Below are positions 1 to 64,000 of a stretch of 64,000 nt of DNA, piece after piece. The stretch comes from Botryllus schlosseri (Eukaryota), in assembly GCA_051294905.1 (NCBI GenBank), contig CM119372.1, positions 19,964,001 to 20,028,000 of the forward strand. Direction: 5' to 3'. A program made the translations under genes and the position numbers. Under the pieces are notes generated by a model that ran no database searches, was not told the origin of the DNA, and was given only the letters and a program-made list of their open reading frames with translations. Position 1 is the first letter of the stretch. Every line of letters begins with the position of its first letter.

Positions 1-2103
1 ATTCAAATCAAGTCGAAATACAAGCAATCTCCTCTAAATGAATACTAGTCAGCCTTCATGATCACCGGACCACGACCTAACATATCGACTCGCCTTCCGC
101 CACATGCCACCTCATTTTGTCGCTTGCCTTTTATATTCTCTGCTTTACTTTTCATTCAGTGTTCAACTGCGTATGCCTCTTCTCTACTTCGCCTACCTAG
201 GCCAAAGTGGGTGTCTGATCTCAAAGATATCAATGAAAATATCGGAAGGTGCCGAAGCGACTTGGAGTAGTCTATGGAATCAGACACCCAGCTTGGCCTG
301 GGCGATGTAAAGAGGAGGCATGCACATTGCACAGTTGCACACTGATGAACTTTCCGTACTCAAATGTCTTTATTCTTAATCTTCTCGCAAATATCGCAAA
401 GGTTACTTTTCCAAAGCTCTAGTTGAAAGCCGAATGCCATTGATTGCACCAAGTTATTTCTTTAGTAAATTCAAACTCGAAATATATACCCCAGATACGG
501 ATTGCCGCCCATACCTTCCATTTTATGACCGCTAGAAGGCGCTGGAAGTATATGTTTGAAAATATTATGCTAATCTCATAAATGGCGATTGCGTGCATGC
601 CGGAGCGTTCATAATAATCGTCGATGAGAAAGGTGATGTGCAATATGAGTCGGGATATCAAGATGTTCTGGATATCCCTGGATATTACTAAGTCACAGCT
701 GTTTATAAAAGCATTGTCTGCCAAGAATAGAAACTTGTTAATACTGGCTCGGACAAGTTGTCAACATTACCCATCCACTCGCCAATTTTTATTCAGATGC
801 ATTCGTCGTCCTACGTATTGTATTCCCTTGCTAGAAACACGCCTTCGCTGTTCAATGTGGGCAGTCGTATTCTTTCGCTCTTATCGTGTTTTTTCTCGCG
901 TCTATGAATTAATCCCAGAGCTTTACTGTTCGGACACATTTCATGCCCGACAATCACGTGTATCAAACAGGAAAATAAAATAATAGTACGAACACGGAAC
1001 TTAAAGAATTCCATTGCAGTAATAACGGAAAGTAACTAGATATAAATATTAACTATAAAATGAGTTGCACGAGTATCATCATAAAGTAAAGAAGGTGGCC
1101 TAACATAAACGCTAAACAGTTTGCTGTCTTTTCTCGCCTGGTAGTTCAGTAAAAGAAGTAGATTCAGCCGATGAAATGCTTTCAGTGTAATACCTTTTCT
1201 TTCCTTCTTTCAGCATTTTCCTGATGAAGATGAAAGTGAATGGTTTAGCAAATTAGTCGCATTAGACACCGCATATCCCACTTGAGGGAGCATAAGTGAA
1301 TCTGATAGCCTCTATTGCTAGTCGTCTCATTGAACTGGGAGGGTTTTTATGAGTTATATTTTATCGGGTAATGCATTACCCGTCTGAGAGAACATAAATC
1401 GACAATTCAATGATCGTTGCTTGACAAATCCTGCAAGCCACAGGAATGATTGGAGATGTATAAGGCGACTTACTTCGCCGTCTCTCTTGGAAACTCAATT
1501 ATAATATCTACATATCAGGAAAATATCACTAGTCATCAATGTCAATTTCCGTTATAGACATGTCACAGCGAATGGATGCACTGAATTCGCACTCGGTCTT
1601 ATTGAAGCTTTTGTCCCCAAGGGCGTAGTCGGGCTGTCGGATTTTGATTAATAGCACACTCTACGTTGTCACGAAATTGGAGAATTTATTTGGCCTTGTC
1701 TCTCTTCCTTCGTCAACGCTTTTTAAGCGTTATATATGTCAACAAATTTCACTCCGACTGCTCTATAGGCATAGAGCAGTATGAATAGTGTATAATGCGG
1801 GTAAATTACAATGTCCGCACAGCGCGGACGGCTGCAAATTCACGCAGTTGCGATGTAAAAGCTCCGTTTGATGACAAATGTTGATTTATTTGCGGGATAT
1901 ACTTCGGGACGGAGTGAGACGGAAATATTTTCTAAAAAACACTGTCTATATAGGCATGTCAGCGGCAAACGTACCGGCGTTTCTTCACGATAAGTAAAAT
2001 GATGAATATCAGCAACGATATTACACTGACCACGAGAATGCCGACTTTCATTCTGAAATCATCTGAAAAGTGGAATCGGTTATAGTTCGTAGAGTGGTCA
2101 AGT

Positions 2104-27792: not shown

Positions 27793-28027
27793 GTTATTCG
27801 ATCATAGTCGCGCCAAAGTTGCATCCCCGCGAGAATGGCGAGATTTTCTAAAATGTTTTTAAGCTCGGGCTGACGTCATTGCGGATATTGCGACTGACCT
27901 TATTTTGTAGGCCACTGACCTTATTGTGCGTCATTGGATTGGATGCTGTTTTGCTTGTAGCGTACACTTGATCGCACCAACGCTGGTTATGGTTTTAGGC
28001 GAAAAAGTATATAGGGTTGGTGTGATT

Positions 28028-28210
28028 ACATGCAAAATAAGGTCATTCGCGACATGCAAAATGAGGTCAGTCACATGCAAAATAAGGTCAGTCACGACAT
28101 GCAAAATAAGGTCATTCGCGACATGCAAAATAAGGTCAGTCACATGCAAAATAAGGTCAGTCGCGACATGCAAAATAAGGTCATTCGCGACATGCAAAAT
28201 AAGGTTAGTC
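28028..28210 (+). repeat. Minisatellite, 8 units of acatgcaaaataaggtca(g/t)tc(gcg), 21/24 bp, with a 69-bp higher-order pattern
   Basis: Unit lengths 24-21-24-24-21-24-24; two inverted units at 27890-27930. Confidence 0.95.
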
Positions 28211-29539
28211 CGCGTACGACTTCTTCAGCGAAGGCTGTGCGAGTGTAAGGTTTCCGCATTGTAGGTGTAGCTTTATGAAGTGTATATGTGTAAATGGTGT
28301 GCTGTTTAATATCAGCTAGCGTCAAGTAAGTCTTTTGCTGTTTGATTTCACGCGTGATTAGCTAATAATACTGATAGCCTCTAAATCAGTCTGTTCTGTT
28401 GCAAATAGGGCTGAGCACATGAGCGATCCAATTCCGAATCCCGTATTGGTATTGTACTTCGAGAGTCGAGTATTCGAGAATTACTCGTCATTATGAGGTA
28501 TTAACGGTATGTCCAAATATGTTTCTTTTATACGTCCTCAAAGGATATAATGCCTGTTCTCCATCACATTGGAGATTTTTGGTGTTTTTCGACCATACCG
28601 ATTTCATTGCACTTAGTGACCTGTTATGGGTTGATAATGACTTGAGAAATATGTTATTACTCGTAACGTTGGTAGCTTTGTTGTGCCTTTGTACCATGTC
28701 AGTGGTTCTCAACATTTTTGTCTTCGCGGGCCCTCAAGCCTTAGTTCAAATTTTCTTCTATTATCGTGCAACCGTCATCTGTCTCGTGTAATTATTAACT
28801 GTAGGCTATTGATGAACAGCAATAAAATGACCGATCTTGAAAATAACATTTACTATTTATGTAGAAATTGGGAAGACTTCATTTTATTTCAAAGCGAATT
28901 CTGTAGCTGCATTTTATGAAATACTGGCCATATCTTGAAAAGACGCGCCATCAATTTGATGTAAACGAGTGCCTAAAATCCATTTCCACGAAAATGGGGA
29001 AGGCTAATGTAATAATGCATAACGTTTCCGACGACACATTTGGCTATGATCGCAACATACAACATACAGATCAATATAATGTCCAGCCTAGTTATTTCTA
29101 TGTAGCAGGTAGTAGCTCATCTTGAAGTTATTCGGGACTAACAGTAATGTTTCTCATAGGAGAATATGGATCTCTGTAAACAAATATTTTTCAAAACCTA
29201 ACACACCATCCCTAAACAGCAAAATGTTACAATGTTGGTATAAAATTAGGCTATTGGCAATTAAAATGAGTTCGCATAGTGGTATCTATCAACTCAGACG
29301 AACATTCTGGTTATAAGAGTCCTGAAGTTTTAGCAGAAAATGAAGCGAAAGTGGTTTATCATTTCTCCAATTTAAAGAAAATATGAATAAATAAGGTTAT
29401 TAACCATTTTGCAAAAACGATTAACATTGTACATCAACAATCGTATCTCAAGATATAGCGTCACCAGCATGAAATTTCGAATACGAGAGCGTTCAATGTA
29501 CTATTTTTAGATGGCACACAAACTCTTCTTGTTGACACA

Positions 29540-30049: not shown

Positions 30050-30650
30050 TTGACACAGCCTTGGCTGGTGTATTTTGATCAAAGTCAAATTTTAGGCGCA
30101 CAACAATAATAATATAAGTATAGGCCTACAAAGTATGCACTGAATACAACTGTCTTCGTATGTTATATGTCCTGTTGGTAAATCAGAAGTGATCAGATCG
30201 TTCCCCACGGATTCAAATTTACATCCTCAATTCGAATCTAAGAAACGACACAATCAACTTTTATCTTTAATTTTGCGAAACTGGTTATTGAGAATGACTA
30301 ACTAAAAAATTCTTGTCTGTGTTTTTGATGCGTGTACTTGTACGGTGTACGCTACCATTAAATTAGTGATTGGTATGTTTTGAAAATTTTATCTCCATTA
30401 TTTCCTTGGTCGCTATATAGTTGAATAAATATATTGCGTTTTCGCTAGTATTCTCACTTTAATATGGTGGATTCAGATGTTCACTGCAGCAAGCAAGCTA
30501 AAAAGTTTACCTGCCCCTGATATAGGGGCTGGGCCACATTGACAAAATCGACAGACCCGCTATGTGGATGCTCTTTGACTAATGTCCAGAGGGCTTGAAT
30601 TGACCATTGATTTTATTGCAGCACTTTACGCTATATGCTACAGTATAAGA

Positions 30651-31505
30651 ATGGGCTATAATTGTTGTGTTCCGGGATGTAGAACTGGTTATAAAAGGAA
30701 GAAAGGTGAACCGGAAAAGAGCCCTGTTCCTTGCTATAGATTTCCAAGTGATCCTAGCATGCAGGCGAGATGGATTAGAGCAATCGCGAGTGAAGGTTTG
30801 GTCGCTTCACATGGACGTAGAGTTTGCCAGCTACACTTTTCGGATGACGATTTCCAACAATTTTCAAGTGACAAGCAGTCAAGGCGCAAGAAACATCATG
30901 GTGGTGCAAAATTATCTAGACCACGTCTAAAACCTACTGCTGTTCCTCATATTTTCCCAACTTTGCAAACTTATCCAACGAGTTCCAATCCGAGGCCTCT
31001 AAATAACAGCATCTCCTTATCTGCTCGCCTTTCCAGCGAAGATGCACACAGAGAAGAATGCAAAGCGGAGTTTGTTCAGCAGGAATGTGTGGATGATCTC
31101 GACTCGTTGAAAGAAAAGTTTCTGAATGAGCTTCCTCCTGCCGGATACATCATTTCTGCTGACAATGAGACGTTGCAGTTCCATCTTATAAGTTCGACAA
31201 TAGACATTAATCACCCACCTATGCTCAAAGCTTCGGTGATAGTATTAAATGACATGAGGATTCATTCATTCATCAAGGGATCCCCTGTTCCGCCTTCGGT
31301 TTATGATGACTTGTTGGGTGCAAGTTACATTCAAACGACATCCGAATTGAAAAACATTCTTGATAGATGTAAATCATTGTCAAGCGATGACGAGAATTCC
31401 ACCCACATCGACTTTGCTCTATCTTTGTTGGAAAAGTACATAACTGTGCAGGTGCCATCTAAACAATCTGAAGTCTTCAGATCAGATTCGTTATTGAACA
31501 ATTGA
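30651..31505 (+). CDS. THAP-domain protein derived from a P-element/THAP9-like transposase, copy 1 (3' end frameshifted; 284 aa from the ATG)
   Basis: C2CH THAP signature CCVPGC..RFP..W..VCQLHF..PTAVP. Frameshift near 31470; downstream homology (IEQLTL, SPALYKQLL) continues out of frame to ~31830, with a TAA and an ~200-bp interruption. Confidence 0.85.
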   Translation: MGYNCCVPGCRTGYKRKKGEPEKSPVPCYRFPSDPSMQARWIRAIASEGLVASHGRRVCQLHFSDDDFQQFSSDKQSRRKKHHGGAKLSRPRLKPTAVPHIFPTLQTYPTSSNPRPLNNSISLSARLSSEDAHREECKAEFVQQECVDDLDSLKEKFLNELPPAGYIISADNETLQFHLISSTIDINHPPMLKASVIVLNDMRIHSFIKGSPVPPSVYDDLLGASYIQTTSELKNILDRCKSLSSDDENSTHIDFALSLLEKYITVQVPSKQSEVFRSDSLLNN

Positions 31506-32435
31506 CTCTTATCAAGTGCCCCTTTATCACCTGCAGATAATCTTCAGATTGCTTGTCCTTTATATGCTATCTTATATTGCTTTTCATTTAGTATTCCGTA
31601 CTTCACATCGTTTAGGCCCAGATTAGTGTCTGATTTCAAAGACTCCAAGTCGTTTTGTCCCCAGTCATTCTTTTAATTGCAAAACAATCTTGTGGTGTTT
31701 TTGAAAGGAAAAAATTATTAACACTAAACTCGACTCAATTTAGTACCTGATTGCAATCCCTTTCATGTAGAGATTGAATAGTCCCAGCTGTCTATAAGCA
31801 GCTGCTGGATATTTTTGTTTGGCCCTAAATTCATTACCTGGCCGTCAGTTATGATAAAGTAAGACGCAGTCACCGATTATAGATTGTCCTGCGGAGTTGA
31901 AATTTCACTAAATTTTCATTTAATGCATGTCAACAAGTTTTTGCGAGTCTTTGTGGTAGAATGGATCGACTCATATCTGTTATCAAGTGGCCCATTCTGG
32001 ATTTTTAGACATCCCTGCCGATTTTTAGATATCCCTGCCATGACGCAGTGGTGGGTCGTCCCATAGGGCAAGTGGGACATCGCCCCACCTATAAATCTGT
32101 GCAATGCCAATACATTATTTATAGACGTTTGTAAATGCCTAGCCAAGGCATTCATTTTCTTGCTTTAGTAATGCTCATAACTATTGTAGCTTTTATTGTC
32201 TAATCTCCCGAAAAGCCACTCACAATAGTTGAGTTTCTTTTTTGTCTTATTCGGCAAAATTAGTAACCACATTAGCAAATTTTGATTTTCCTGATTTTTT
32301 CTCGTAAAGCTATCACTCCCGTATTGTGTTGCTCTAACCCCAAAGAAATGTCACCAGATCACCCGTGTGGAAATAATTACCAACCAGTCAAGAACCTCTG
32401 TCTTAAAATTACATATAGCCTACTCGCTACTAAAA

Positions 32436-33548
32436 ATGGGTTATAGCTGTTGTGTTCCTGGATGTAGAACTGGCTATCGAAGAAGGAAAGATGAACCTAA
32501 AGACAGTGCTTCTGTGCCTCGTTTTGGTTTTCCACGTGATGCTGACATGCAGAAAAGGTGGCTCAAAGCTATCCCAAGAAATGATTTGACCGCTTCAGCC
32601 GGACTTAAAGTTTGCAGGCTTCACTTTTCAGATGACGATCTTGAACATATTTCGTGTGATGCTACGTCGAGACGCAGAAGGAAGCGCACATCTATGGAAT
32701 TGTCAAGATTACGTCTCAAATCAACTGCTGTCCCGCATATATTTCCGTCATTGCCGAAATATCTGACAAAGCCCAATCCGAAGCCTCGAAGTGGCAAGTG
32801 CTCCTCTTCTAGCCGCCTGTCCAGTGAAAATGCGCGCACAGAACACCGTAACGAGGAGTTGATTCGGCAGGAATTTGTACATGACCTCCAGTCTTTGAAA
32901 GAAAAGTTGAAGAAAGAGATTCTTCCGGATGGATATGTCTCAATTGCTGACCACGAAACATTACAGTTCCACCTGATATCTTCGGAAAAAGCTACTGAAA
33001 AGCAACCTATGCTCACATCTTCTGTAATTGTAGCTAAGGACATGACAATTCGGTCATTTGTTAAAGGCACCCTTGTTCCGTCTTCTATTTATGAAGACTT
33101 ATTGTCTGCAAATTGCGTGAAAAAGACATCCGACATAAACAATGTTCTTGCAAGATGCAAGGCATTGTCACTGTCTAGTGTGAATCCCATCAACTACATA
33201 GACTCGGCTGTCTCGCTGTTGAAGAAGTATCAATCTAGCAATCATTTGTCGTCTGCAAGATATGATGACATCAACCCTACGTTGATCGGATTCATTATTG
33301 AGCAATTGACGCTTTGTCAGGTGCCCCCTAAAGGTCGCAGATACTCTTCAGATATGATAGAAACTGCTTTGATGTGGAAATCGAATAGTCCAGCTCTCTA
33401 TAAGCAGCTGCTGAATGTTTTTGCTTTGCCTACAATATGTTCCCTCCATCGGTTATGTAAGGATAAGACACAGTCGCCAGTTGAAGTGGATATGGATTTT
33501 CCTGCTATTAATGACCCTGTTGTGAGATCCGTGGAATCGGAGTTATAA
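32436..33548 (+). CDS. THAP-domain protein derived from a P-element/THAP9-like transposase, copy 2 (370 aa, no catalytic domain)
   Basis: Intact THAP domain (CCVPGC..RFGFP..RW..VCRLHF..STAVPHIFP). Followed by KGRRYS..SPALYKQL..LPTICSLHRL, typical of the P-transposase N-terminal helical region, then a stop before any DDE/RNase H core. Confidence 0.9.
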   Translation: MGYSCCVPGCRTGYRRRKDEPKDSASVPRFGFPRDADMQKRWLKAIPRNDLTASAGLKVCRLHFSDDDLEHISCDATSRRRRKRTSMELSRLRLKSTAVPHIFPSLPKYLTKPNPKPRSGKCSSSSRLSSENARTEHRNEELIRQEFVHDLQSLKEKLKKEILPDGYVSIADHETLQFHLISSEKATEKQPMLTSSVIVAKDMTIRSFVKGTLVPSSIYEDLLSANCVKKTSDINNVLARCKALSLSSVNPINYIDSAVSLLKKYQSSNHLSSARYDDINPTLIGFIIEQLTLCQVPPKGRRYSSDMIETALMWKSNSPALYKQLLNVFALPTICSLHRLCKDKTQSPVEVDMDFPAINDPVVRSVESEL

Positions 33549-35378
33549 TGAACATACTTTAACACCACGTTGAAGTCTGAGGATTCGAGAGTCTGAGTCG
33601 GTTAACGAGTGGCCGATGCTGAAGTTTAAATATTCATGTGGTGACTTCATATGCTTATTAAAATAAATCACTTCAAGTTTTGAGGATGCTGAACTCTTCA
33701 TTCATCCATGCCAGACTGGATATGTTTCCCACATTGTGTGTTTCCGCATGTGCTTAATGAATGTATTTTTGCAGGTTGGGTCCCGTAGCTAGGACGTTTA
33801 AAAATGACCAGTCAGAAAAGTACTCGAGTGGTTTGAAGAACTGCGTTATGACCAGACTTCGCAGTCGTTTGTTAGTCAAGCACAATTGAGTGGATTCACA
33901 ACTGAAAGACGACATGACAAACAAAGTGACTGTTGCTTCAGATTAGTTCAAATTATGATCATTTACGGTATTGCATTCGAAAGCTACATCACGCCTATTT
34001 TCTATGTTGATTTTGAGTAATAAAAGTGATGCAAACCCATAGCAATACCAGAGGTGGTGGGTAAACAAGTACTTCTACTGTTTCGAAGTACTCAAAGTAG
34101 TTTCCCCTACTTTAAATACTTGCTCAAGTAAGTCTAATTTTCCACTAATTATACTTTGTCATATTTGGTGACTAATGTTTTGCTATTAAGGTTTGTCAAG
34201 TAGAAGTATTATGTTCTTCCAATGGTAGAGAAATTGAGATAGAGAAATTTTGTAGTAACTCTGCTAGATCACAACCATTGGATATGCCGCCTCGTAACAT
34301 AGCGATAACTGAGTATATATTTTTGCATTTCATTGTGCATGACTGGAGACTAGGATGGCCAAGACAGGCATTTCATTGTAACTTCAATGAATAGTGAAAT
34401 TACCACATTAATGGTATTTTGTCTATCAGTCCTAGTATTTGGAAAAGGGGGCCAGAAACTGGCGAGACTGAGGAAAATTACTATATTATGAATGCGAGTC
34501 CTGTTATCAGGCACTGTGGAGTTGAAATTTCAGTGAATTCATGTATTGAATATAAAAGCCATCATTTAAGGTTTTGCGAGTCTTGAGTTTGTGGTAAAAT
34601 GGATCGACTCCTCATTTATGTCTGTTATCAAGTGGCCCATCCTGGATTTTTAGATATCCCTGCCATGAAACCATGGTGGGTCGTCCCATAGGGCAAGCGG
34701 GACTTCGCACCACCGATAAATCTGTGCAATGCCAATACAACATTTATAGTCGCAGGTCAATAAAAATGGCGCAATTGTTGTGAAAATCGCTATACTTTAC
34801 TGTGCTTTCGTATGTAAATGCCTAGCCAAGCCATTCATTTTCTTGCCTTGGTACTGCTCATAACTACTGTAGGTTTTATTGCCTAATCTCCCACAAAGCC
34901 CCTCACAATAATGAAAGCAACAATTGGGTTCCTTTTTTGTCTTATTCGGCAAAATTAGTTACCAAATTAGCAAATTTTGATTTTCCTTACTTTTTCTCGT
35001 AAATCTATGATATAATCAAACATGTCTGTACCTGAAATTCTTGTGCAGTCTACAAAAAAAGCAAGTGACAACTAGTGATGTTTCAATTGCTCCAAACTGG
35101 CTAATCCTGTAAGGTGTTGCAAATCCGCTGACCCAACTTGAATACATGCGGGTTAGGGCTGTTCAAAAATAACTTTTTTTCCTGAATCTTGCTGGTTACT
35201 TGATTAAATCGTTAGGTTGCCTTAAAAAACGACGCATACCAAATTTGAATTCATTCCGACAAATATTCGCGGGTTACGTAGAGTTTGAAAATTTTGGATT
35301 TGCCCAAAAACGCAAAAAAAAATTTTTCTCAAATGTTTTTGCCAACCCCATGAAATTGTTGGGCTGTCTTCAAAAACT

Positions 35379-36269
35379 ATGCAAAACAAATTTGACTCAA
35401 TTCCAAGCCGTAGAAGCGGAGTTATTCCAGTTTTTCGGTCAACTGCTGTACCGCATATATTTCCGTCATTGCCTAAATATCTGACAAAACCCAATCCGAA
35501 ACCTCGAAGTGACAAGTGTTCCTCTTCTAGCCGCCTGTCCAGTGAAAATGCCCGCACAGAACAACGTAACGAGGAGTTGATTCGACAGGAACTTGCATAT
35601 GACCTACAGTCTTTGAAAGAAAAGCTGCAGAAAGAGATCCTTCCAGATGGATATGTCTCAATTAGTGACCATGAAACATTACAGTTCCACCTGATATCTT
35701 CGGAAAAAGCTACTGAAAAGCAACCTATGCTCACATCTTCAGTAATTGTAGCTAAGGATATGACGATTCGGTCATTTGTTAAAGGCACCCTTGTTCCGCC
35801 TTCTACTTATGAAGACCTTATGACTGCAAATTGTGTGAAAAAGACATCCGACATAAACAATGTTCTTGCAAGATGCAAGGCATTGTCAATGTCTAGTGTG
35901 AATCCCATCAACTATATAGACTCGGCTGTCTTGCTGTTAAAGAAGTATCAATCTAGCAATTACTTGTCGTCTGCAGGATCTGACGACATCAACGCCAATT
36001 TGATCGGATTTATTATTGAGCAATTGACGCTTTGTCAGGTGCCCCCTAAAGGTCGCAGATACTCTTCAGATATGATAGAAACTGCCTTCATGTGGAAATC
36101 GACTAGTCCTGCTCTCTATAAGCAGCTGCTGAATGTTTTTGCTTTGCCTGCGATACGTTCTCTCCATCGGTTATATAAAGATAAGACGCAGTCACCAGAC
36201 GAACTGGATATGGATTTTCCTGCTATTGATGACCCTGTTATGAGATCTGTGGAATCGGAATTACCATGA
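35379..36269 (+). CDS. THAP-less paralog, copy 3 (296 aa; first 20 codons come from a MITE)
   Basis: From 35439 collinear with copy 2 (STAVPHIFP...VESEL) with no indels. The ATG at 35379 lies in repeat sequence homologous to 37769-38231. Confidence 0.75.
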   Translation: MQNKFDSIPSRRSGVIPVFRSTAVPHIFPSLPKYLTKPNPKPRSDKCSSSSRLSSENARTEQRNEELIRQELAYDLQSLKEKLQKEILPDGYVSISDHETLQFHLISSEKATEKQPMLTSSVIVAKDMTIRSFVKGTLVPPSTYEDLMTANCVKKTSDINNVLARCKALSMSSVNPINYIDSAVLLLKKYQSSNYLSSAGSDDINANLIGFIIEQLTLCQVPPKGRRYSSDMIETAFMWKSTSPALYKQLLNVFALPAIRSLHRLYKDKTQSPDELDMDFPAIDDPVMRSVESELP

Positions 36270-37057
36270 TCATTCTTTAACTCCACATTGAATTTGAGGA
36301 TTCAGGAGTATGAGTCGGTTGACAAGTGGCCCGTGCTGCAGTTTTAGATATCCTCGCGAATGCTGCGATGACTTCAAATGATTTTTAAAATCAATCGCCT
36401 CAAGCTTGCTGAATACTTCATTCATCCATGCCAGACTGAAGATGTTTCTCGCACTGCAATTTTCTGCATGCGCCCACTTAATGTATTTTTGACGGTTGTG
36501 TCCTGTAGCTAATTGGTTGGTTAAAAATGAGCAGTCTGAATGAAAGCACTCGAGTGGTTTAAAAACTGGGTCATGACCAGACTTCACAGACTTCAATCGC
36601 AATTGAGTGCGTTCAAAACTGAACGATTACATGACCAATGCAGCGTGACTATTGCTTCGGATAGGTTGAAATGATGATCAGTTATTGCAATCGAAAGCTA
36701 CATCACGCCTATTTTCTATGTTGATCTGAGTAATAAGACAGATGCAAACCCATAGCAATACCAGAGGTGGTCGGTAACTAAGTACTTCTACTGTTTCGAA
36801 GTAATCGAGTAGTTTCCCCTACTTTCAGTACTTGCTAAAGTAAGTCTAATATTCCGCAACTTCACTATGTCATATTTTGTGACTTGCGTTTTGCTATGCA
36901 AGGTTTGTCAAGTAGAAGTAGCAAATTTTGATTTTCCTGAATTCTCGTAAATCTATGTAGTCAATCATGGCTGTACCTGAAATCCTTGTGCAGTCTACTA
37001 AAAGCAAGTGATAGTTTGTGAAGGTTCAATTGCGCCAGGCTCGCCAATCCTTTAAGG

Positions 37058-37719
37058 CAATGGTTCTTGACCTCGGGGGGTAATAACCCCCGAAAGGGTA
37101 TTTTTCCGATTTTGGGGGCGTAATTCAAATTATGTTTTTATATACTTATAACGCTGCACTGAAATATTTTCAAATGTAAATATGAATGTAGGCTAACATA
37201 TATCTTTGTGAGCTTGCATATATTTCGTTTCCTTGTTTCGTTTTACACCATGCCTGCTGTGATATCATAGTAACCGTTAGTGTTTATGCATAACAGGGTC
37301 GACTGTGGTTTAATATAGTGCTAGGTAAGTCCCATTTATTTTGCAGTATTGCGGATCATACATTGTTGCACATGCTGGCAAATTGAAAGACAACAAGGTG
37401 GTCTAAATTTAGCTTTACACCTATAATGTAGCAACAATATCGTAGAAATATGGTTGGTAGTAGTGAAGTGTAGTGGTCTAGTCTAGTCAGTAAAATTGAG
37501 TCTGAAATCATCAAAATGCCTTCAAAGAAACGAGGGGAAGATTTTAAAACATTTTGGGTTCGCCTTGAAAATGAATAATCAATCTTTGTCATATATCAAG
37601 TCATTAATTAAATGGCATTCAACTATCTGATTGAATTTCCTTCCTTTTCGAAAGGGGATAATTGCATCCTTTCATTTTCTTCTGGGGGGTAACGATATGA
37701 AAAAGGTTAAGAACCACTG
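37058..37719. mobile_element. hAT (Charlie-like) MITE inserted in THAP-array unit 4
   Basis: TIRs caatggttcttgacct / aggttaagaaccactg; TSD ctttaagg/ctgtaagg; the empty site (single ctgtaagg) is visible at ~35107 in the paralogous unit. Confidence 0.85.
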
Positions 37720-37768
37720 CTGTAAGGCGTTGCAAATCCGCTGATCTAATTTGAACACATGTGGGTTA

Positions 37769-38231
37769 GGGGTCTTTAAAAATTACTTTTTTTTCCCAAA
37801 TCCTACTGGCTACTTGATAAAATTGTTATGTTACCTCATTTAAACCCACACACCAAATTTGGTTTAATTCCAACCAGTAGCCGCATTGCTACAGGAGAAG
37901 AAAGTTTCTATTTATTATATAAAAATAAATAACAAAAAATTTGAAAATTTTCTTTTCACCCCATGAAAGTGTAAGGTTGTCTACAGGGACGATTTCACCA
38001 AATTTGGTTCAATTCCAACCAGAGGAAGCGGAGTTAATGACGTCGAAAAATTTGGATATGAATAAAATAGTATTTACGGTGGGCACCAGTATAATAAATA
38101 ATTGAAGAATTGGTCACCGTAAATACTATTTTATTCATAATCCAAATTGTGTAGGCTTAAATTAGGTAACCTAACAATTCAACATCAAGTAGCCAGTACG
38201 ATTTGAGAAAAAAGTCATTTTTGAAGACCCC
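37769..38231. mobile_element. Long-TIR MITE, probably PIF/Harbinger-type, with an internal ~100-bp palindrome (38049-38148)
   Basis: ~70-bp imperfect TIRs starting ggggtc / ending gacccc, flanked by tta / taa. A truncated copy sits at the same site in unit 3 (35156-35438). Confidence 0.65.
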
Positions 38232-38689: not shown

Positions 38690-38930
38690 GTTATTCAACG
38701 GCCGCAGCATGCAAATTATGGTCAGTTGCTATACAATGCAAAACGAGGTCGGTCGCCACGCACACAATAAGATCGGTCACTGCATGCAAAATAAGGTCAG
38801 TAGCTACATACAAAATAACGTCAGTCGCTACGTACGAAATATATACAGTCGTGACGAGCAAGATGAATACAGGCTTTCCGAGCACAGTAAGGTCAGTCGC
38901 TACATGCAAAATAAGTATAGTCGTCACGTG
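38690..38930 (+). repeat. Degenerate copy of the 21/24-bp minisatellite
   Basis: Repeated (c)atgcaaaataaggtcagtcgct-like units. Confidence 0.8.
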
Positions 38931-41760
38931 CACATCTCCACAATAATGGTAGAATTTAAGGCTTGGGTCATTATAGACAGGACCATAACTGCCGCACCCC
39001 AACCCCCAATTGGGAGGGGGGCAAAATTATTTTGCAAATCAATATAAATTATAGGGTACGGAGATTTGGTCCAACCTTAAAATTTTGTCCGCGCGATTTA
39101 GTGTAATTAAATGTATAATTTTTAATATGGAAAAATTACGCATCATTTCTAAACAAAATAGGTATTTCAGCGCCGCGGCCATTACCTCTCCATGATAAAC
39201 CAAGACTATACTGATGTAACTGATCACGTGGACTGGGAGGCGATGATAAATAATTAGCAATATATGCAATTACCAATAGGCATAATTCTAGGTTTACCAT
39301 ATTATGGAATCGGGAAAGGAGGACACTTTCAAATACCCTGCAACGGTCAAAGTGATTTTCTGTTAGCGGTACAAAGGACTGTCGGGAAGGGAGGTCTGGT
39401 GGCGCAGCCCCCCAGAGGTTTGGTTTGTGATCACATGCGGGTCAAGACCAACCACGTTTTGGGGGGGCTGCCGAAGTGCTGTTTCGGTCGTGATTATAGT
39501 GTAGGCCGGAAGGGGGTTAAGTGTCATTAAGGTTTGTATATGGCTTGAAGGCTACTGTTATTAGTAGGGCAGTAGTTTTTGCAACTTCTTTTTACAACTT
39601 CCTAGATTAGTTAGAATATCTGTAATATATGATGTTTTGAGCAGTTTGGAGGGATTTTATAGTGCAACTTTTCTCTATTTTTCATACCAATTTTTACTAC
39701 AACTTTTATCAAATATTGCGTAAGAATGTAAAAGAGTGATTTAAAATCAAGTCATAAACTATTTCTAGTGTGGTTGTATTCTCTTTGATTTGCATAACAA
39801 TGAGCTATATGATGGGTTAGGTGCATCCCATTGTTATTTACGACACAATGGCTTGTAAGCAAGAATCTCAACTACCCCTGCCAAGCACGACCGTAGCCGA
39901 ACAATATGTAAATAGATCGCTTTATTAATTCTGTCGTTTCAATTTGAGATAGTTTCCTATTTCACGAACACCCAGGCGAGACCGCCGAAAATTACATTAT
40001 CACTGGCGGGTCACATTATTCAGGCTATTACCTTTGTTAAATTCGCCAAGAGTTAAATTCTCCGTAGGTCAAGTTTGCAGACCTAGGGTATTTGCTGGGT
40101 GTGTTGTTTGACTTGTTGTATGGGAAGGGGGTTATCGCTACGCTGTTTGGCTTTTTGGGGAAATTATTCCCGCACCGCCTAATTTTCTTGTTGTGTACCG
40201 AAATAAAATGTAATTTTTGCCGGTCTCGCCAGAATGTCCGTGAAATAACAAAGTAACAAATTTAACAGCTCTGCACAGGAACTAGGTTATACAATGGAAC
40301 CTTTTGAGTATCTCATATCCTACTAATTCAACAAAAATTATAAATGGAACTTTTTACTGAAACTTTTATCAAAATAAAGGGCAACTTTCTCGCGATTTTA
40401 GTGCAAAAACTTGCCCTAGTTATTAGGGTTGGGGGTTATTACGAGAGAGAGAGAGAGATTTATTTTGTTAGCCGATGGCGCCACAATTGATAGAACGCCT
40501 ATAAGTATGTAGTATTTAACAAAACAAAGAACAGTGGTTTTATCGATATTGACTGGTACCGGCGATATGATAATGACGATCTTCAAGTAAACCGGAACCA
40601 TGGTTATTCAATTAAAATAATGCCATGATGAATAAACGAACCAGAATATATCGTACAAATGCAATAGTAGTACTCGCTGAGCAGTAAAACAAAAGAAGAT
40701 ATGAAACACTTAACAGCTACGTCACACACAATCATTGTGCACAAAGTACAAATATGTTGCATTGCATATTTAAATACTGAGAATGGACAGTTGTAGAGCC
40801 CTGGCTCTCTCTCGTACGTCACGTGATTTATGTCTTTCTTCTCGTACCACGTGACTTACCATTTATTATCCGTGTATTTGAATTATATGCTCTGAGGCCA
40901 GGGGTGTCAAACTCAACTTGCGTCGCGGGCCGGATTCAAACCTTCAAATCGCATGTGGGCCGGCCGCACCAGTAAAATAATTTCGAAATAATACCTTAAA
41001 ATTCATGCCCATGTTTTCATTTGAATACTTTATCATCAAGTCACAACAGTGCATTAGATTACGGATCATATGGGTTCTATTCTGGCTACACCATTATTCG
41101 CAAACAATGGAATTGGCAACAATACGGTAACTGGATTGGGCTGGCAAATACAGTCATAAACCGCAGAACAGTGGTTCTGACGATGTTGTCATATTTCTAT
41201 ACTCCCTTCGTTTTAGTCTTACGCTACCGTCAACGTTGCGTAGGCCCATGCGTTGCGACGATTACAAGATATTTATCTGTAGCCTAAACGAGGACGTTGG
41301 AACTTGCTTCATTGTTAAATCGCGATTCAGGTTTCTCTCGAGGCCGGAGACCTTTGCAGCAGTGCGACCACCGACATATAAAACTATGAACTCTGTACGC
41401 GCTTTTTGCCTTTTCGGAATTGGTTTCAATGTTAGCGAATTGTTCCTAATAGTGACTATAGTGAAACCAACTCACCGCTGTCGGATGGTTATAATGTGGC
41501 CTGTGAACATTTCTCTGCATTTGCTGTTTATGGGATGTGGCAGTATTTCTTACTAAAAATCCAAACATTTGTTAGAAATGTACTAGATAATACACGAATT
41601 TTCAATCAACTCATAATTGCCTCGCGAGCCGGATGAAATCGGATGGCCGGATAGTTTCTAGATATCCCTGGGTTTTTGTAGCAGATCCCAAACTATCATC
41701 CCATAGTAGGTGGGAATGTATGATAAAAAAAATAGAGAGTGCGGAGAAATGGTTTTAGAA

Positions 41761-49055: not shown

Positions 49056-50904
49056 CAGTGGTTCTTAACCTTTTTTCCTCCAGCGCCCCCTTTCAAAAAT
49101 TATCGTGCTCCAGCGCCCCCCAACCTCATATTGTAAGGAATGTAATAAAGACAATGAGTAAGAGGGAGGGCCGTAACAGCACTTCGTCAACCCCCCTAAA
49201 AACGATTGCCTTGCGCACCTATAGCATGAGAAACCAAACTTCTGATGGCTTCGCTCCCAAGAACCCCGTAGCGTGATTTCGATGGTCAGCAAAGTTTGTG
49301 TGGCCTGGTCGCCCTAGGTACCAAAATTTTCTATAATGCATGAATGAATAGCTGGTAATTACATATATAAGTCGCTATAAACTTTTTATCCTCTCAGCCC
49401 ACGTAATCAGATTTACCAGTAACGCTGAGTGAGCTGTTGTATGGGAAAATAAAGGCCACGTAATTAATAATTAAACATATTCGGGCGTGCCCGTAGGTAC
49501 AATTAATTCGTTACCAGGGCCGTAACAGCACTTCATCACCCCCCCCCCCCAAAAAAAAAAACGTTGGTCTTGGGCCATCGGGCGATAAGCCAAACTTTCG
49601 GTGAGCTTCGCCTCCAGACCCCCCTTTGGCAAACCGCTATTTGCTGATACTAGTCATCTACATTCGGTGTCCATTTACTGAGCCAGCTATTCTCACCTAG
49701 ACGCGCCAAGCGCGAAAAATTTCAATTATTAATGATTGAATTGGTCAATATGAACGGGAATTGCATGTATACTGATATTAATTTTTATCCTCTCTCTGCT
49801 CACGTAAACAGATTTACGGGTAGAGCTGAGTGATGTGTGATTGAAAAGGTAGGACACCTCAATAATAATTATACATCTTCGGGCGTATACCCGTTGGCAG
49901 GAACGAAACGGCAATTCGTCAGGGCCCCGAAAAAAACTTGGGTCTTCGGCTCCCATAGGGTGATAAACCGACCCATCACGTTGTTCGCTTTTGCCACGAA
50001 ATCAGCTGTACTGTTTAGCGAGCCAGTGCGAAAACTTTCGATAATTCATGATAAAATCGGTCAGTAAGATTGGGAATTGCATATATATTGCTATCAATTT
50101 CTTGTCCTCTCTGCTCACGTTACCAGATTTACCGGTAGAGCTGAGTGAGGTGCAATGTTCCCTCTAAGCTGCGCACGTGCGCAGTGCTGACACGGTCTCT
50201 GCGCACAGAAAATCTACGTTACGCACAACAAATCCGAAGTTATCACCTTTTTTTAGTCGTTACGCACTTTTGTTCAAGGGTCTGCGCAGTGAGTTAGTGA
50301 GTGTGCGCAGATTCGTCAAAACGTAAAGGGAACATTGTGAGGTGTCTTGGAAACTGTAGGGACCGTAACTAATAATTAAACATATTCGGGCGGGCGGACC
50401 CGTTGGTATGACTTCGTTGCATAATGTTATTTCGTGACCTCCTGTCTGCTATATCAAAAAATACAGAATCACCAACAGGGATATCTAGTTCTATATATCC
50501 CTGCCGCCCAATCGTACTAAACTAAAAGACGCACACGATTTCAAATTGGTATTTCTTCACTGGCATATAATTTTTCCCAGCCAGATGGAATTCGTCTTCT
50601 GAGGTTCAGATTGCCAAGACAGAAACATTCGGTGCCAGTCATTTATAGGCGCCCATGGACAATTACACGTATATGTCTTTTGTAGGCTATATATAACGAA
50701 GTTTTCAGTGTTAATTCGCTCTGAATACTCATTAAGGATATGTCCTACCACCACATCCTCTACTGCGAAGCCATTTTTCTCCAGCGCTCCCCATACCGCC
50801 CCCTGAGCCCAGCGCCCCCCCATATCGCCCACTGAGCGTTTCCGCCCCCTTCAAAATCGCCAGCGCCTCTTGGGGGGCGCTGGAGGCAAGGTTAAGAACC
50901 ACTG
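49056..50904. mobile_element. 1.85-kb non-autonomous hAT element with an internal tandem triplication and a nested MITE
   Basis: 17-bp TIRs cagtggttcttaacctt / aaggttaagaaccactg; subterminal ctccagcgcccc repeats at both ends; TSD ctccaagg/ctctaagg. Confidence 0.85.
50153..50337. mobile_element. 185-bp MITE (caatgttccct TIRs) with an apparent 7-bp TSD
   Basis: TGAGGTG on both sides; the paralogous repeat at ~49825 has a single site. A second copy lies at 2104-2301. Confidence 0.85.
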
Positions 50905-62840: not shown

Positions 62841-64000
62841 TTAATGCGCGATTTTCAAATGATACACAAATTCTTTCTGTTGGCATAGACTAGGTTTGCT
62901 CATAGTGATGATGGTGGACTCAAGAACAGACAAATGAAATAAATTGCGACCCTTAGCCAATATAGAGAACATGTCCTCGTGATAGTTAGCAGCACACGTA
63001 TGATTTTCTAGTAAATGTTTGCCTATAGAAGATTTTTGACCCATGGCCTGGTTATGTTCAAGAACAAGCGGATTGTTAAGCTGCGAATTTGAGATATAAG
63101 ATTTGACAGATGGTGGAATGTGTTCTTTGATACGGTCCTGCAACCGTTTGGAAGTTCTCCCTACGTACCGACAATCGCAGTGGCACTTGAATTCATAAAT
63201 TACGTTGCTTTGTTTTATAGCCGGGAGAACGTCCTTTCGGGTTGCAGGAAACATTGGTATCGTGGTAAAAACAACATTGGTTTTCACCGCTGGATAACAG
63301 CGGTAGACTGCTGAAGTTATCTGTGTCTCAAATCGATAAGAAACCGGGCCAATCCAAGGAAGATGAATGTACACATCCCTATTTTCACGAGAAATTACTT
63401 CGGGGGTTTCTTCTGGTTTGGTATCATTCCAATGACTTAACTTTTTACTTATTGTCCGCTTAATAACATACTCTGGGTATCCGTTGTCAATGAAAATTTT
63501 ACGGATGTAGTCAAGTTCATTATTCAATTTGACCTCGGAACAAATCATCAACGCCCGGTGAACCAAGGTGCCGATTAAATTGATTTTACGACTTTTTGGG
63601 CTGAAAGAGCTCCATCGAAGGTAATGACCCGAAAATGTGGGCTTCCTATAAACGGAGGTAAGGAATTTTCCATCCCGTTTCTCCACAAGAACGTCAAGGA
63701 ATGCCAGGCGATTGTTAATTTCTTTTTCCGACGTGAATTGCAATGCTGGATGTAGTTTGTTTAAATTTTCCAGGAAAGTATCACAGTCAGATTCATTATC
63801 GAATATCACGAACGTGTCATCGACATAGCGATGGTATGATAAGGGCGGTTTAATAGAAGAAGAGAAGATCTTATCTTCATGAAATCCTACAAATATATTG
63901 GCTAGAATAGGACCCAATGGTGATCCCATTGCTACACCATCAGATTGTCGGAACATGATATTGTTGAAACTAAATTCAACAGAACACACAGCGTTTCTCA
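62841..64000 (-). mobile_element. Penelope-like element ORF (reverse transcriptase + GIY-YIG endonuclease), 5'-truncated by the window edge
   Basis: RT motifs QSDGVAMGSPLGPILANIF and RYVDD; TSVYRKPT; C-terminal VIYEFKCHCDCRYVGRTSKRLQDRIKEH (GIY-YIG). No stops over >380 codons. Confidence 0.95.

What the first reader, a model, noticed from the sequence alone, without database searches (positions are those of the whole stretch)
30651..36269. Tandem cluster of catalytically truncated P-element transposase genes: candidate domesticated P-neogene/repressor locus
Seen: three tandem ORFs with a THAP C2CH finger (copies 1 and 2) and the P-transposase helical region (KGRRYS..SPALYKQL..LP). Copies 2 and 3 end at the same position before any catalytic domain. 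They keep ~830 bp of open, indel-free coding sequence while the duplicated non-coding flanks carry many indels. I found no TIRs or TSD around the units. Known: THAP is the P-transposase DNA-binding domain, and in Drosophila TIR-less, tandemly repeated P-neogenes encode repressor-like truncated transposases. Inference: an independent domestication and amplification of a P-transposase N-terminus, acting as a host transcription factor or a P-element repressor.
Basis: partly seen in the sequence, partly recalled or inferred. Interest (0 to 1): 0.75.

Follow-up and report, generated by a model that had tools for sequence, protein, structure and literature searches.

The report
Immobilised truncated P-transposase gene cluster
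Three neighbouring leftovers of internally deleted P transposons sit here. At least one (copy 2) is an expressed gene kept by selection for a DNA-binding transposase head with no cutting domain, much like the P repressors and P-neogenes of fruit flies, in a genome that still carries intact P elements.

Summary
The observation mostly holds. Copies 1 and 2 have a THAP finger. Copies 2 and 3 share 825 bp with no indel and stop one codon apart, where the RNase H domain of full-length P transposases from the same genome begins. No catalytic sequence lies in the window or within 10 kb either side.

Each copy is followed by a decayed P 3' end with a recognisable terminal inverted repeat. The units therefore began as internally deleted, KP-like P elements. 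No 5' repeat or target duplication remains.

Copies 2 and 3 are in-place duplicates. Their dN/dS is 0.23-0.37 and dS matches flank divergence. They differ at 27 residues against 43 expected under neutrality, and show 0 indels against about 17 expected.

RNA reads cover copies 2 and 3 but not the spacers. Six reads join the end of a published chordate spliced leader 21 nt before copy 2's ATG. Intact P elements with repeats and 8-bp duplications coexist in the genome.

Copy 1 is decayed and, by synonymous distance, comes from another P lineage. Copy 3 lacks the zinc finger.

Verdict: a stationary, selected truncated-transposase locus, probably a repressor. It is a new member of a known kind. The scan has no report of this on other DNA.

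The parts
28261..28360 (+). Fragment of a P-element 5' UTR (matches positions 295-394 of mobile element PelA). It is probably the detached 5' UTR of copy 1, separated from it by about 2.25 kb of inserted DNA.
   Evidence: blastn 71% over 100 bp, E 2e-7. Local alignment score 55 against a shuffle maximum of 26.
30610..31874 (+). Copy 1, the P-homologous body. The CDS runs 30651-31505 (285 aa from MGYNCC) with THAP at 30663-30956. The frame breaks after residue 284, and an out-of-frame SPAVYKQL remnant lies at 31784-31840.
   Evidence: It is 65% identical to residues 3-284 of FL961.
31877..32037 (+). P 3' end of copy 1, with the TIR at 31987-32017 and a 20-bp duplication of the TIR tip at 32018-32037. 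The duplication is absent from two other individuals' contigs.
   Evidence: About 24 of 30 positions match the PelB TIR (my count). The 20-bp indel is, table 4.
32038..32435 (+). Spacer and upstream region of copy 2. It holds a dispersed 90-bp repeat at 32038-32127, then locus-specific sequence with no similarity to the P 5' end. RNA reads carry the spliced-leader junction at 32415.
   Evidence: Loose end at 32415; leader identity.
32436..33548 (+). Copy 2, an intact 370-aa CDS. THAP C2CH is at 32448-32744, followed by a long helix, a small beta domain and a helical HTH-like region. The last 15 residues are encoded by P 3'-end sequence.
33501..33640 (+). Decayed P 3' end fused to the copy 2 coding sequence by the internal deletion. 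The degenerate TIR lies at about 33600-33640.
   Evidence: Alignments A1 and A3; sequence.
33641..34499 (+). Downstream region of copy 2. It is duplicated after copy 3 as far as 34208 and contains a high-copy repeat from about 34050.
   Evidence: (contig depth 100-485).
34500..35008 (+). A second P 3' end (TIR at 34632-34662) plus a copy of the repeat and spacer found after copy 1. This marks the start of the duplicated unit that carries copy 3.
35009..35438 (+). Unrelated sequence X that replaces the promoter-proximal region and the THAP zinc-finger codons in copy 3. Its core, 35155-35437, is a high-copy repeat. It supplies the ATG at 35379.
   Evidence: (depth 276-1276, loose ends at 35155 and 35437).
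35439..36269 (+). Copy 3. The P-homologous coding body runs from the AVPHIF motif to the stop (the ORF is 35379-36269, 296 aa). It has no zinc finger and is otherwise open and indel-free relative to copy 2.
36219..36356 (+). Decayed P 3' end of copy 3, with a recognisable TIR at 36312-36356. About 35 of 47 positions match the 34618-34664 copy (my count).
   Evidence: (family D9).
36916..38036 (+). Partial fourth unit: the spacer end plus a second copy of X (36916-37057 and 37720-38036, split by about 660 bp). No coding body follows.

Best explanation
The locus is a stationary array of internally deleted P-element derivatives.

An internal deletion removed everything from the start of the RNase H domain to about 140 bp from the 3' end. 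What remained was an ORF for THAP, a helix, a small beta domain and the HTH-like region, fused to a short tail read from the 3' end.

The copy 2 lineage then lost its 5' end, including the TIR and 5' UTR, and its 3' TIR decayed, so it can no longer move. A 2.6-2.7 kb segment containing it was duplicated in tandem, which produced copy 3. In copy 3 the zinc-finger exon was later replaced by unrelated repeat DNA.

Since that duplication both coding bodies have been held by purifying selection. Copy 2 is made into a spliced-leader-capped mRNA. I infer that copy 2 encodes a working sequence-specific DNA-binding protein without nuclease activity.

The most likely role is a repressor of the autonomous P elements still present in this genome. 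It could occupy their ends or co-assemble with full-length transposase, as the KP and 66-kDa proteins do in Drosophila.

Copy 3, which has no THAP, might act only through protein-protein contacts, or it may have been disabled recently. Copy 1 is a decaying neighbour from a different P lineage.

Shown: anatomy, origin, immobility, selection, transcription.
Inferred: protein function and target.
For: P origin and truncation:
- THAP hits.
- 59-65% identity to residues 1-360 of same-genome transposases. These carry THAP, TNP-like RNaseH_N and GBD domains and match Drosophila P transposase 6p5a at E 1.8e-13.
- No catalytic homology in 84 kb.

Deletion-derivative origin:
- The tail and the following 140 bp align to P 3' ends, including the TIR.

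Immobility:
- No 5' TIR, and the upstream region is unrelated to the P 5' end.
- No copy above 60% identity elsewhere in the genome.
- The flanks are co-duplicated.

Selection:
- dN/dS is 0.23-0.37 and dS (0.15-0.20) is about equal to flank divergence.
- 27 residue differences against 42.9 +/- 3.4 in neutral simulation, with 0 of 20000 simulations as low. Zero indels against 16.7 expected.
- The signal persists outside the antisense ORF.
- The two lineages show similar non-synonymous counts.

Expression:
- RNA reads cover copies 2 and 3 but not the spacers, and they carry locus-specific variants.
- A leader junction lies 21 nt before the ATG.

Presence in the population: 19 runs from 6 studies hold the stretch.

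Targets exist: P elements with 31-bp TIRs and 8-bp TSDs, copies 97-99% alike, and an uninterrupted 956-aa ORF.

Precedent: truncated THAP-bearing P proteins repress transposition (PMC7776569).
Against: - Only one of the three copies is intact. Copy 3 lacks the zinc finger and copy 1 is broken.
- Expression is low, roughly 30 reads over copy 2 in 12.9 million read, and the library is unstranded.
- The leader junction rests on 6 reads from 2 start points. The reference shows AT, not AG, just before 32415.
- An oligo-dT primer junction at 33515 suggests a polyadenylated minus-strand RNA as well.
- No orthologue could be examined. The best outside protein is 43% identical.
- No binding or repression data exist.
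- A selected protein could equally be a host transcription factor unrelated to P control.
Confidence: 0.6

Rival explanations
1. These are ordinary dead, internally deleted P copies that were caught up in a segmental duplication. The ORFs are open by chance and have no function.
For: P 3' ends with TIR remnants follow every copy. Copy 1 is frame-broken and copy 3 is 5'-truncated. The genome holds more than 100 P fragments. Expression is low.
Against: Neutral decay since the copy 2/copy 3 duplication predicts about 43 residue changes and about 17 indels. The observed values are 27 and 0, with p below 1/20000 and about 5e-8 respectively. dS matches the flank divergence, so gene conversion does not explain the difference. 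Only 15% of neutral simulations stay free of stop codons.
Confidence: 0.1
2. Copy 2 is a domesticated host transcription factor of the THAP type that regulates cellular genes and has nothing to do with P-element control.
For: The selection, expression and immobility evidence is the same as for the main explanation. The new upstream region is unrelated to P. The copy 2/3 lineage is old relative to the mobile subfamilies (dS 0.82-0.88). THAP recruitment into host genes is recurrent (reference lists).
Against: The protein keeps the whole transposase N-terminal region up to the RNase H border, not just THAP. Autonomous relatives at about 60% identity are still present and recently active. No orthologue evidence for an old conserved host gene was found.
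Confidence: 0.2
3. The locus works at the RNA level, as a transposon-fragment trap or piRNA-type source that silences P elements. The protein is irrelevant.
For: The neighbourhood is dense in transposon fragments. Reads lie in both mate orientations, and a possible minus-strand polyadenylated end sits at 33515.
Against: RNA-level function does not predict a deficit of non-synonymous changes or the absence of indels. Nucleotide identity to the mobile elements is only 71-77%, which is poor for small-RNA targeting. The library is unstranded, so mate orientation says little.
Confidence: 0.07

Closest known systems
Drosophila P-neogenes (obscura and montium groups; Pinsker et al. 2001 and Quesneville et al. 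2005, seen only as references; details from my own knowledge)
   Same: These are stationary P derivatives without working TIRs. They encode a truncated, repressor-like transposase that keeps THAP. They are tandemly amplified in the obscura group and maintained by selection.
   Different: Here the truncation is much earlier, at the RNase H border (about residue 360 of 956), and arose by internal deletion that fused the ORF to the 3' end. 3' TIR remnants are still visible. Only one copy is fully intact. The host is not an insect; the spliced leader points to a chordate, probably a tunicate. Conservation across species is untested.
KP and 66-kDa repressors of the D. melanogaster P element (PMC7776569)
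   Same: They are N-terminal transposase fragments with THAP and a dimerisation region but no complete catalytic core. KP is likewise encoded by an internally deleted element. Autonomous elements coexist with them.
   Different: KP elements keep both TIRs and are mobile and multi-copy. Copies 2 and 3 have no 5' TIR, are unique to one locus and were duplicated together with their flanks. Repressor activity here is inferred, not shown.
Vertebrate THAP9 and other THAP-domain host genes
   Same: They are host-resident genes derived from P transposase, with THAP DNA binding.
   Different: THAP9 keeps the full RNase H, GBD and C-terminal domains and can still cut DNA. Copy 2 has none of these. The other THAP genes keep little beyond the THAP domain, whereas copy 2 keeps the entire pre-catalytic region.

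Membership tests
P-element (P superfamily) transposase | N-terminal THAP C2CH zinc finger with the AVPxIF motif | tested here: met
   Pfam THAP E 2.5e-15 for copy 2 and 2.6e-15 for copy 1. The Cys and His columns and the AVPHIF motif are conserved in alignment A2. Copy 3 keeps only AVPHIF.
P-element (P superfamily) transposase | Homology of the post-THAP region to bona fide P transposases | tested here: met
   59% identity over 357 aa to FL961, E 6e-123. FL961 matches Drosophila P transposase 6p5a at E 1.8e-13 and Pfam TNP-like domains.
P-element (P superfamily) transposase | Split RNase H catalytic domain with GTP-binding insertion and C-terminal domain | tested here: not met
   There is no homology beyond residue 360 in the window or in 10 kb on either side. 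Pfam finds no TNP-like domain in the copies. The copies are therefore not transposases.
Mobile P element (autonomous or non-autonomous) | Paired 31-bp terminal inverted repeats and an 8-bp target-site duplication | tested here: not met
   Mobile copies in this genome have both. The window units have only decayed 3' TIRs, no 5' TIR and no TSD.
Domesticated / stationary P-neogene | Purifying selection acting after immobilisation | tested here: met
   In-place duplicates copy 2 and copy 3: dN/dS 0.23-0.37, 0 indels against 16.7 expected.
Domesticated / stationary P-neogene | Transcription into a processed mRNA | tested here: inconclusive
   Low-depth RNA reads are confined to the copies, and 6 reads (2 start points) show a spliced-leader junction at 32415. 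The acceptor dinucleotide in the reference is not AG, and the library is unstranded.
Domesticated / stationary P-neogene | Orthologous conservation at the same locus in related species | not testable with these tools
   No relative's genome is available. The best outside proteins are 43% identical or less. Only presence in 19 runs from 6 studies of the same species is shown.
KP-type (type II) P repressor | Internally deleted element encoding THAP plus a dimerisation region | tested here: met
   The deletion junction fuses residue ~360 to the 3'-end sequence. The model shows the THAP fold followed by a long helix at 124-146.
KP-type (type II) P repressor | Binds P-element ends and inhibits transposition | not testable with these tools
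   This needs biochemical or genetic assays.

The most novel reading that the evidence does not exclude
A non-insect animal, probably a tunicate, has independently evolved a P-neogene-like defence locus. It would consist of a spliced-leader-capped, selected THAP-HTH repressor (copy 2) and a THAP-less paralogue (copy 3) that is also under selection and acts as a dominant-negative partner of the transposase. Together they would restrain P elements that are still active in the same genome.
Probability: 0.3. Interest if true: 0.65.

Novelty: new member of a known kind. Interest (0 to 1): 0.5.

Why it matters
Protein-based self-restraint of P elements and their conversion into host 'neogenes' are known mainly from Drosophila, and THAP9 from vertebrates. 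This is a second, independent case, in a genome where autonomous P elements are intact and recently active. The stationary gene still shows the scar of its origin: the deletion junction and a decaying 3' repeat.

That makes it a natural system for studying how a deletion derivative turns into a host gene. It could also show whether truncated transposases are a general answer to P invasions. The THAP-less but constrained paralogue poses a clear question about dominant-negative regulation.

The locus is one intact gene plus two damaged copies, and the function is inferred, so the interest is moderate.

Tried and rejected
- **Downstream catalytic exon.** tblastn with two full-length transposases over the window (E up to 10) and both 10-kb flanks found nothing. 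RNA reads show no splice joints.
- **Gene conversion as the cause of coding similarity.** Rejected, because dS equals flank divergence.
- **Antisense ORFs (32621-33070, 35222-35788) as the selected frame.** They have no Pfam hit. Their third codon positions coincide with those of the sense frame. dN/dS stays at 0.31 where no antisense ORF exists.
- **The 24-bp arrays at 28001-28234 and 38708-38946 as P subterminal or THAP-site arrays.** Rejected. They are a genome-wide satellite with more than 1180 matches, and none of the P loci fetched holds the motif.
- **A 5' TIR remnant near 27840-27880.** Not significant against shuffles.
- **Copies 1, 2 and 3 as one clade.** The tree places copy 1 with the mobile lineages (93/95), but the AU test does not reject monophyly (p 0.11). 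Synonymous distances favour separate lineages. The deletion junctions of copy 1 and copies 2/3 lie within tens of bp of each other. This remains unresolved.
- **Runs X1 and X2 as RNA evidence.** They have even depth across the spacers, so they behave like DNA and were used only for polymorphism.
- **Orthologue search.** No protein above 43% identity in either protein library.
- **Foldseek against PDB with the whole model.** Only THAP domains at weak E-values.
- **Polarising copy 2/copy 3 changes with outgroups.** Too saturated at silent sites to be useful.
Full report
**What is there.**
The window is part of a 495-Mb animal genome (contig C2). Three same-strand ORFs lie at 30582-31505, 32367-33548 and 35379-36269. 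Pfam finds a THAP domain in the first two (E 2.6e-15 and 2.5e-15) and none in the third.

A six-frame search of the same genome with copy 2 returns more than 100 matches. The best outside the window are only 60% identical, and some sit in open frames of 961-969 residues. I extracted two of these long proteins. They carry THAP, the TNP-like RNase H N-terminal domain (from residue 353) and the GTP-binding insertion domain. One of them, which I call FL961, matches the solved Drosophila P transposase 6p5a at E 1.8e-13. The family assignment is therefore sound.

With these proteins as tblastn queries, the window holds only residues 1-360 (copy 2), 3-284 (copy 1) and 86-360 (copy 3). Nothing from the catalytic two-thirds appears, even at E 10, nor in 10 kb on either side. 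The copies stop where the RNase H domain begins.

**Mobile relatives.**
Two young subfamilies are 97-99% identical within each. They are 3.57-3.76 kb long, with 31-bp terminal inverted repeats starting CAGGGATATCTAGAA and perfect 8-bp target duplications. Subfamily A has three short GT-AG introns and subfamily B at least one. The element holding the uninterrupted 956-aa ORF also has both repeats. Autonomous-looking P elements therefore coexist with the locus.

**Origin of the units.**
The 15-nt repeat core, allowing up to 3 mismatches, matches 10 times in the window against 1.6 expected. Four matches are on the minus strand just downstream of the copies.

Alignment shows that the 140 bp following each coding body is a decayed P 3' end. 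It is well preserved at 31987-32017 and 34632-34662 and more degenerate at 33600-33640 and 36312-36356. The last 15 residues of copies 2 and 3, and their stop codons, are read from this 3'-end sequence.

The units are therefore internal-deletion derivatives. The deletion runs from the RNase H border to about 140 bp from the 3' terminus. [quoted passage not shown]

No 5' repeat exists. The region upstream of copy 2 has no detectable similarity to the P 5' end or to the region upstream of copy 1. P homology starts 5 bp before the ATG. Copy 1 keeps about 40 bp of P 5' UTR, and a further 100-bp piece of that UTR lies 2.25 kb upstream at 28261-28360.

**Array structure.**
Self-comparison shows that 31889-32313 (the 3' end of copy 1, a dispersed 90-bp repeat and unique spacer) recurs at 34514-35008. 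The segment 32721-34208 (the body of copy 2 and its downstream region) recurs at 35439-36920 with a constant 2718-bp offset.

Copies 2 and 3 are thus products of a tandem segmental duplication, not of transposition. In copy 3 the 408 bp that should hold the upstream region and the zinc-finger codons are replaced by unrelated DNA (35009-35438). Its core is a high-copy repeat. The same spacer-to-repeat junction recurs at 36916-38036 without a coding body.

**Selection.**
Because the flanks were duplicated too, differences between copies 2 and 3 arose in place.
- Over 825 bp there are 63 substitutions, split 18/10/35 by codon position, and no indel.
- dN/dS is 0.23-0.37 by four methods.
- dS (0.15-0.20) equals the flank divergence (11-16%), so gene conversion is not needed to explain the pattern.
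- Placing 63 substitutions at random gives 42.9 +/- 3.4 residue changes. The observed number is 27, and 0 of 20000 simulations were as low.
- The flank indel rate predicts 16.7 indels where none is seen, and only 15% of simulations stay free of stop codons.
- The signal holds (0.31) in the part that has no antisense ORF.
- Both lineages carry similar numbers of non-synonymous changes.

Both bodies have therefore been constrained for most of the time since the duplication.

**Expression.**
One bulk RNA-seq run, with 6% of it read, places reads on copy 2 and its downstream region (32250-34050), on copy 3, and faintly on the front of copy 1. It places none on the spacers at 31250-32249 or 34650-35049. 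The reads carry the same variants as DNA contigs of other individuals, so they come from this locus. No splice joints appear.

Six reads (two start points) begin with 14 non-genomic letters joined to position 32415, which is 21 nt before the ATG of copy 2. That 14-mer is the 3' end of a published 25-nt chordate spliced leader (PMC3795323, Table 1). It occurs 508 times in this genome against 3 for a control word. In four of the six loci inspected, the next ten leader letters precede it.

This points to a sense-strand, trans-spliced mRNA and suggests the host is a tunicate. There are caveats. The reads are few, and the reference has AT rather than AG before 32415. An oligo-dT primer junction at 33515 hints at a minus-strand polyadenylated RNA as well. 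The two contig-only runs cover the spacers evenly and behave as DNA. Nineteen runs from six studies hold the stretch, so the locus is common or fixed in the species.

**Relations among the copies.**
Copies 2 and 3 form a 100/100 clade. Copy 1 groups with FL961 and the mobile subfamilies (93/95), although an AU test does not reject a single clade (p 0.11). Synonymous distances agree with the tree: copy 1 to the mobile lineages is 0.49-0.55, while copy 2 to everything, including copy 1, is 0.82-0.88. Yet the deletion junctions of copy 1 and copies 2/3 lie within tens of bp of each other. I leave this conflict unresolved.

Copy 1 is frame-broken after residue 284. It shows polymorphic indels in its decayed 3' part (31642, 31873), and a 20-bp indel in its TIR tip.

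**Protein.**
An AlphaFold model of copy 2 (mean pLDDT 73.8) shows a THAP fold, a long helix at 124-146, a small beta domain at 167-214, a helical region at 231-344 and a disordered tail. Foldseek returns THAP domains, including the Drosophila P THAP-DNA complex. This matches the THAP, dimerisation and HTH order of P transposase (PMC7776569).

**Comparison and verdict.**
The locus works like the KP and 66-kDa repressors and resembles the Drosophila P-neogenes: it is stationary, truncated, tandem and selected. It fails the tests for a transposase (no catalytic domains) and for a mobile element (no paired repeats, no target duplication). Orthologue conservation and repressor activity could not be tested. 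No protein above 43% identity exists in the libraries searched.

I rate it a new member of a known kind, of moderate interest. I put the probability at about 0.6 that copy 2 (and, at least until recently, copy 3) is a functional, host-retained truncated transposase, with P repression its most likely role.

Noticed in passing
window 32415 (RNA reads); genome-wide: RNA reads carry the last 14 nt of a published 25-nt chordate spliced leader. The 14-mer occurs 508 times dispersed in the genome with unrelated flanks, in 3 of the 6 loci inspected followed by GT. These could be leader RNA genes or retrocopied mRNA 5' ends. It suggests the host is a tunicate.
   Followed up: partly
window 28001-28234 and 38708-38946 (inverted copies at 27890-27930): Arrays of a 24-bp unit (core CATGCAAAATAAGGTCA) bracket the cluster in direct orientation. 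The unit is a genome-wide satellite with more than 1180 matches. Elsewhere it often forms paired arrays a few kb apart in opposite orientation, as if it were the subterminal repeat of another mobile element.
   Followed up: partly
L021:4458-8386 (G000 contig C9): A 3.9-kb P element with both TIRs and an uninterrupted, intronless 956-aa transposase ORF. The two abundant subfamilies carry one to three short GT-AG introns at the same places, so intron content differs between P lineages in one genome.
   Followed up: partly
window 666-680, 41656-41670, 50476-50503: Further P-type TIR cores outside the cluster. One matches perfectly. At 50476-50503 a plus-strand and a minus-strand copy overlap back to back. 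They may be solo ends or very short P-derived MITEs.
   Followed up: no
window 33515: Six RNA reads show the SMART oligo-dT primer and a T run abutting plus-strand sequence from 33515. This would mean a polyadenylated minus-strand RNA ending inside the 3' end of copy 2's coding region, or mispriming.
   Followed up: no
window 32038-32127 and 34663-34754: A dispersed repeat of about 90 bp (25 or more copies) starts exactly at the outer edge of the P 3' TIR, and starts at the same base in an unrelated locus (L038). This is either another element's terminus abutting the P end or a preferred P target.
   Followed up: partly
window 35155-35437 and 34050-34650: High-copy repeats (summed contig depth 100-1276 in two runs). 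The first replaces the zinc-finger codons of copy 3 and supplies its ATG.
   Followed up: no
window 32018-32037: A 20-bp tandem duplication of the TIR tip is present in the reference but missing from the contigs of two other individuals, so it is polymorphic.
   Followed up: no
window 62841-63989 (minus strand): A 382-aa ORF with a weak reverse-transcriptase hit (RVT_1, E 5.5e-6, below the Pfam cut-off). It lies next to the Penelope-type element noted by another first-stage finding.
   Followed up: no
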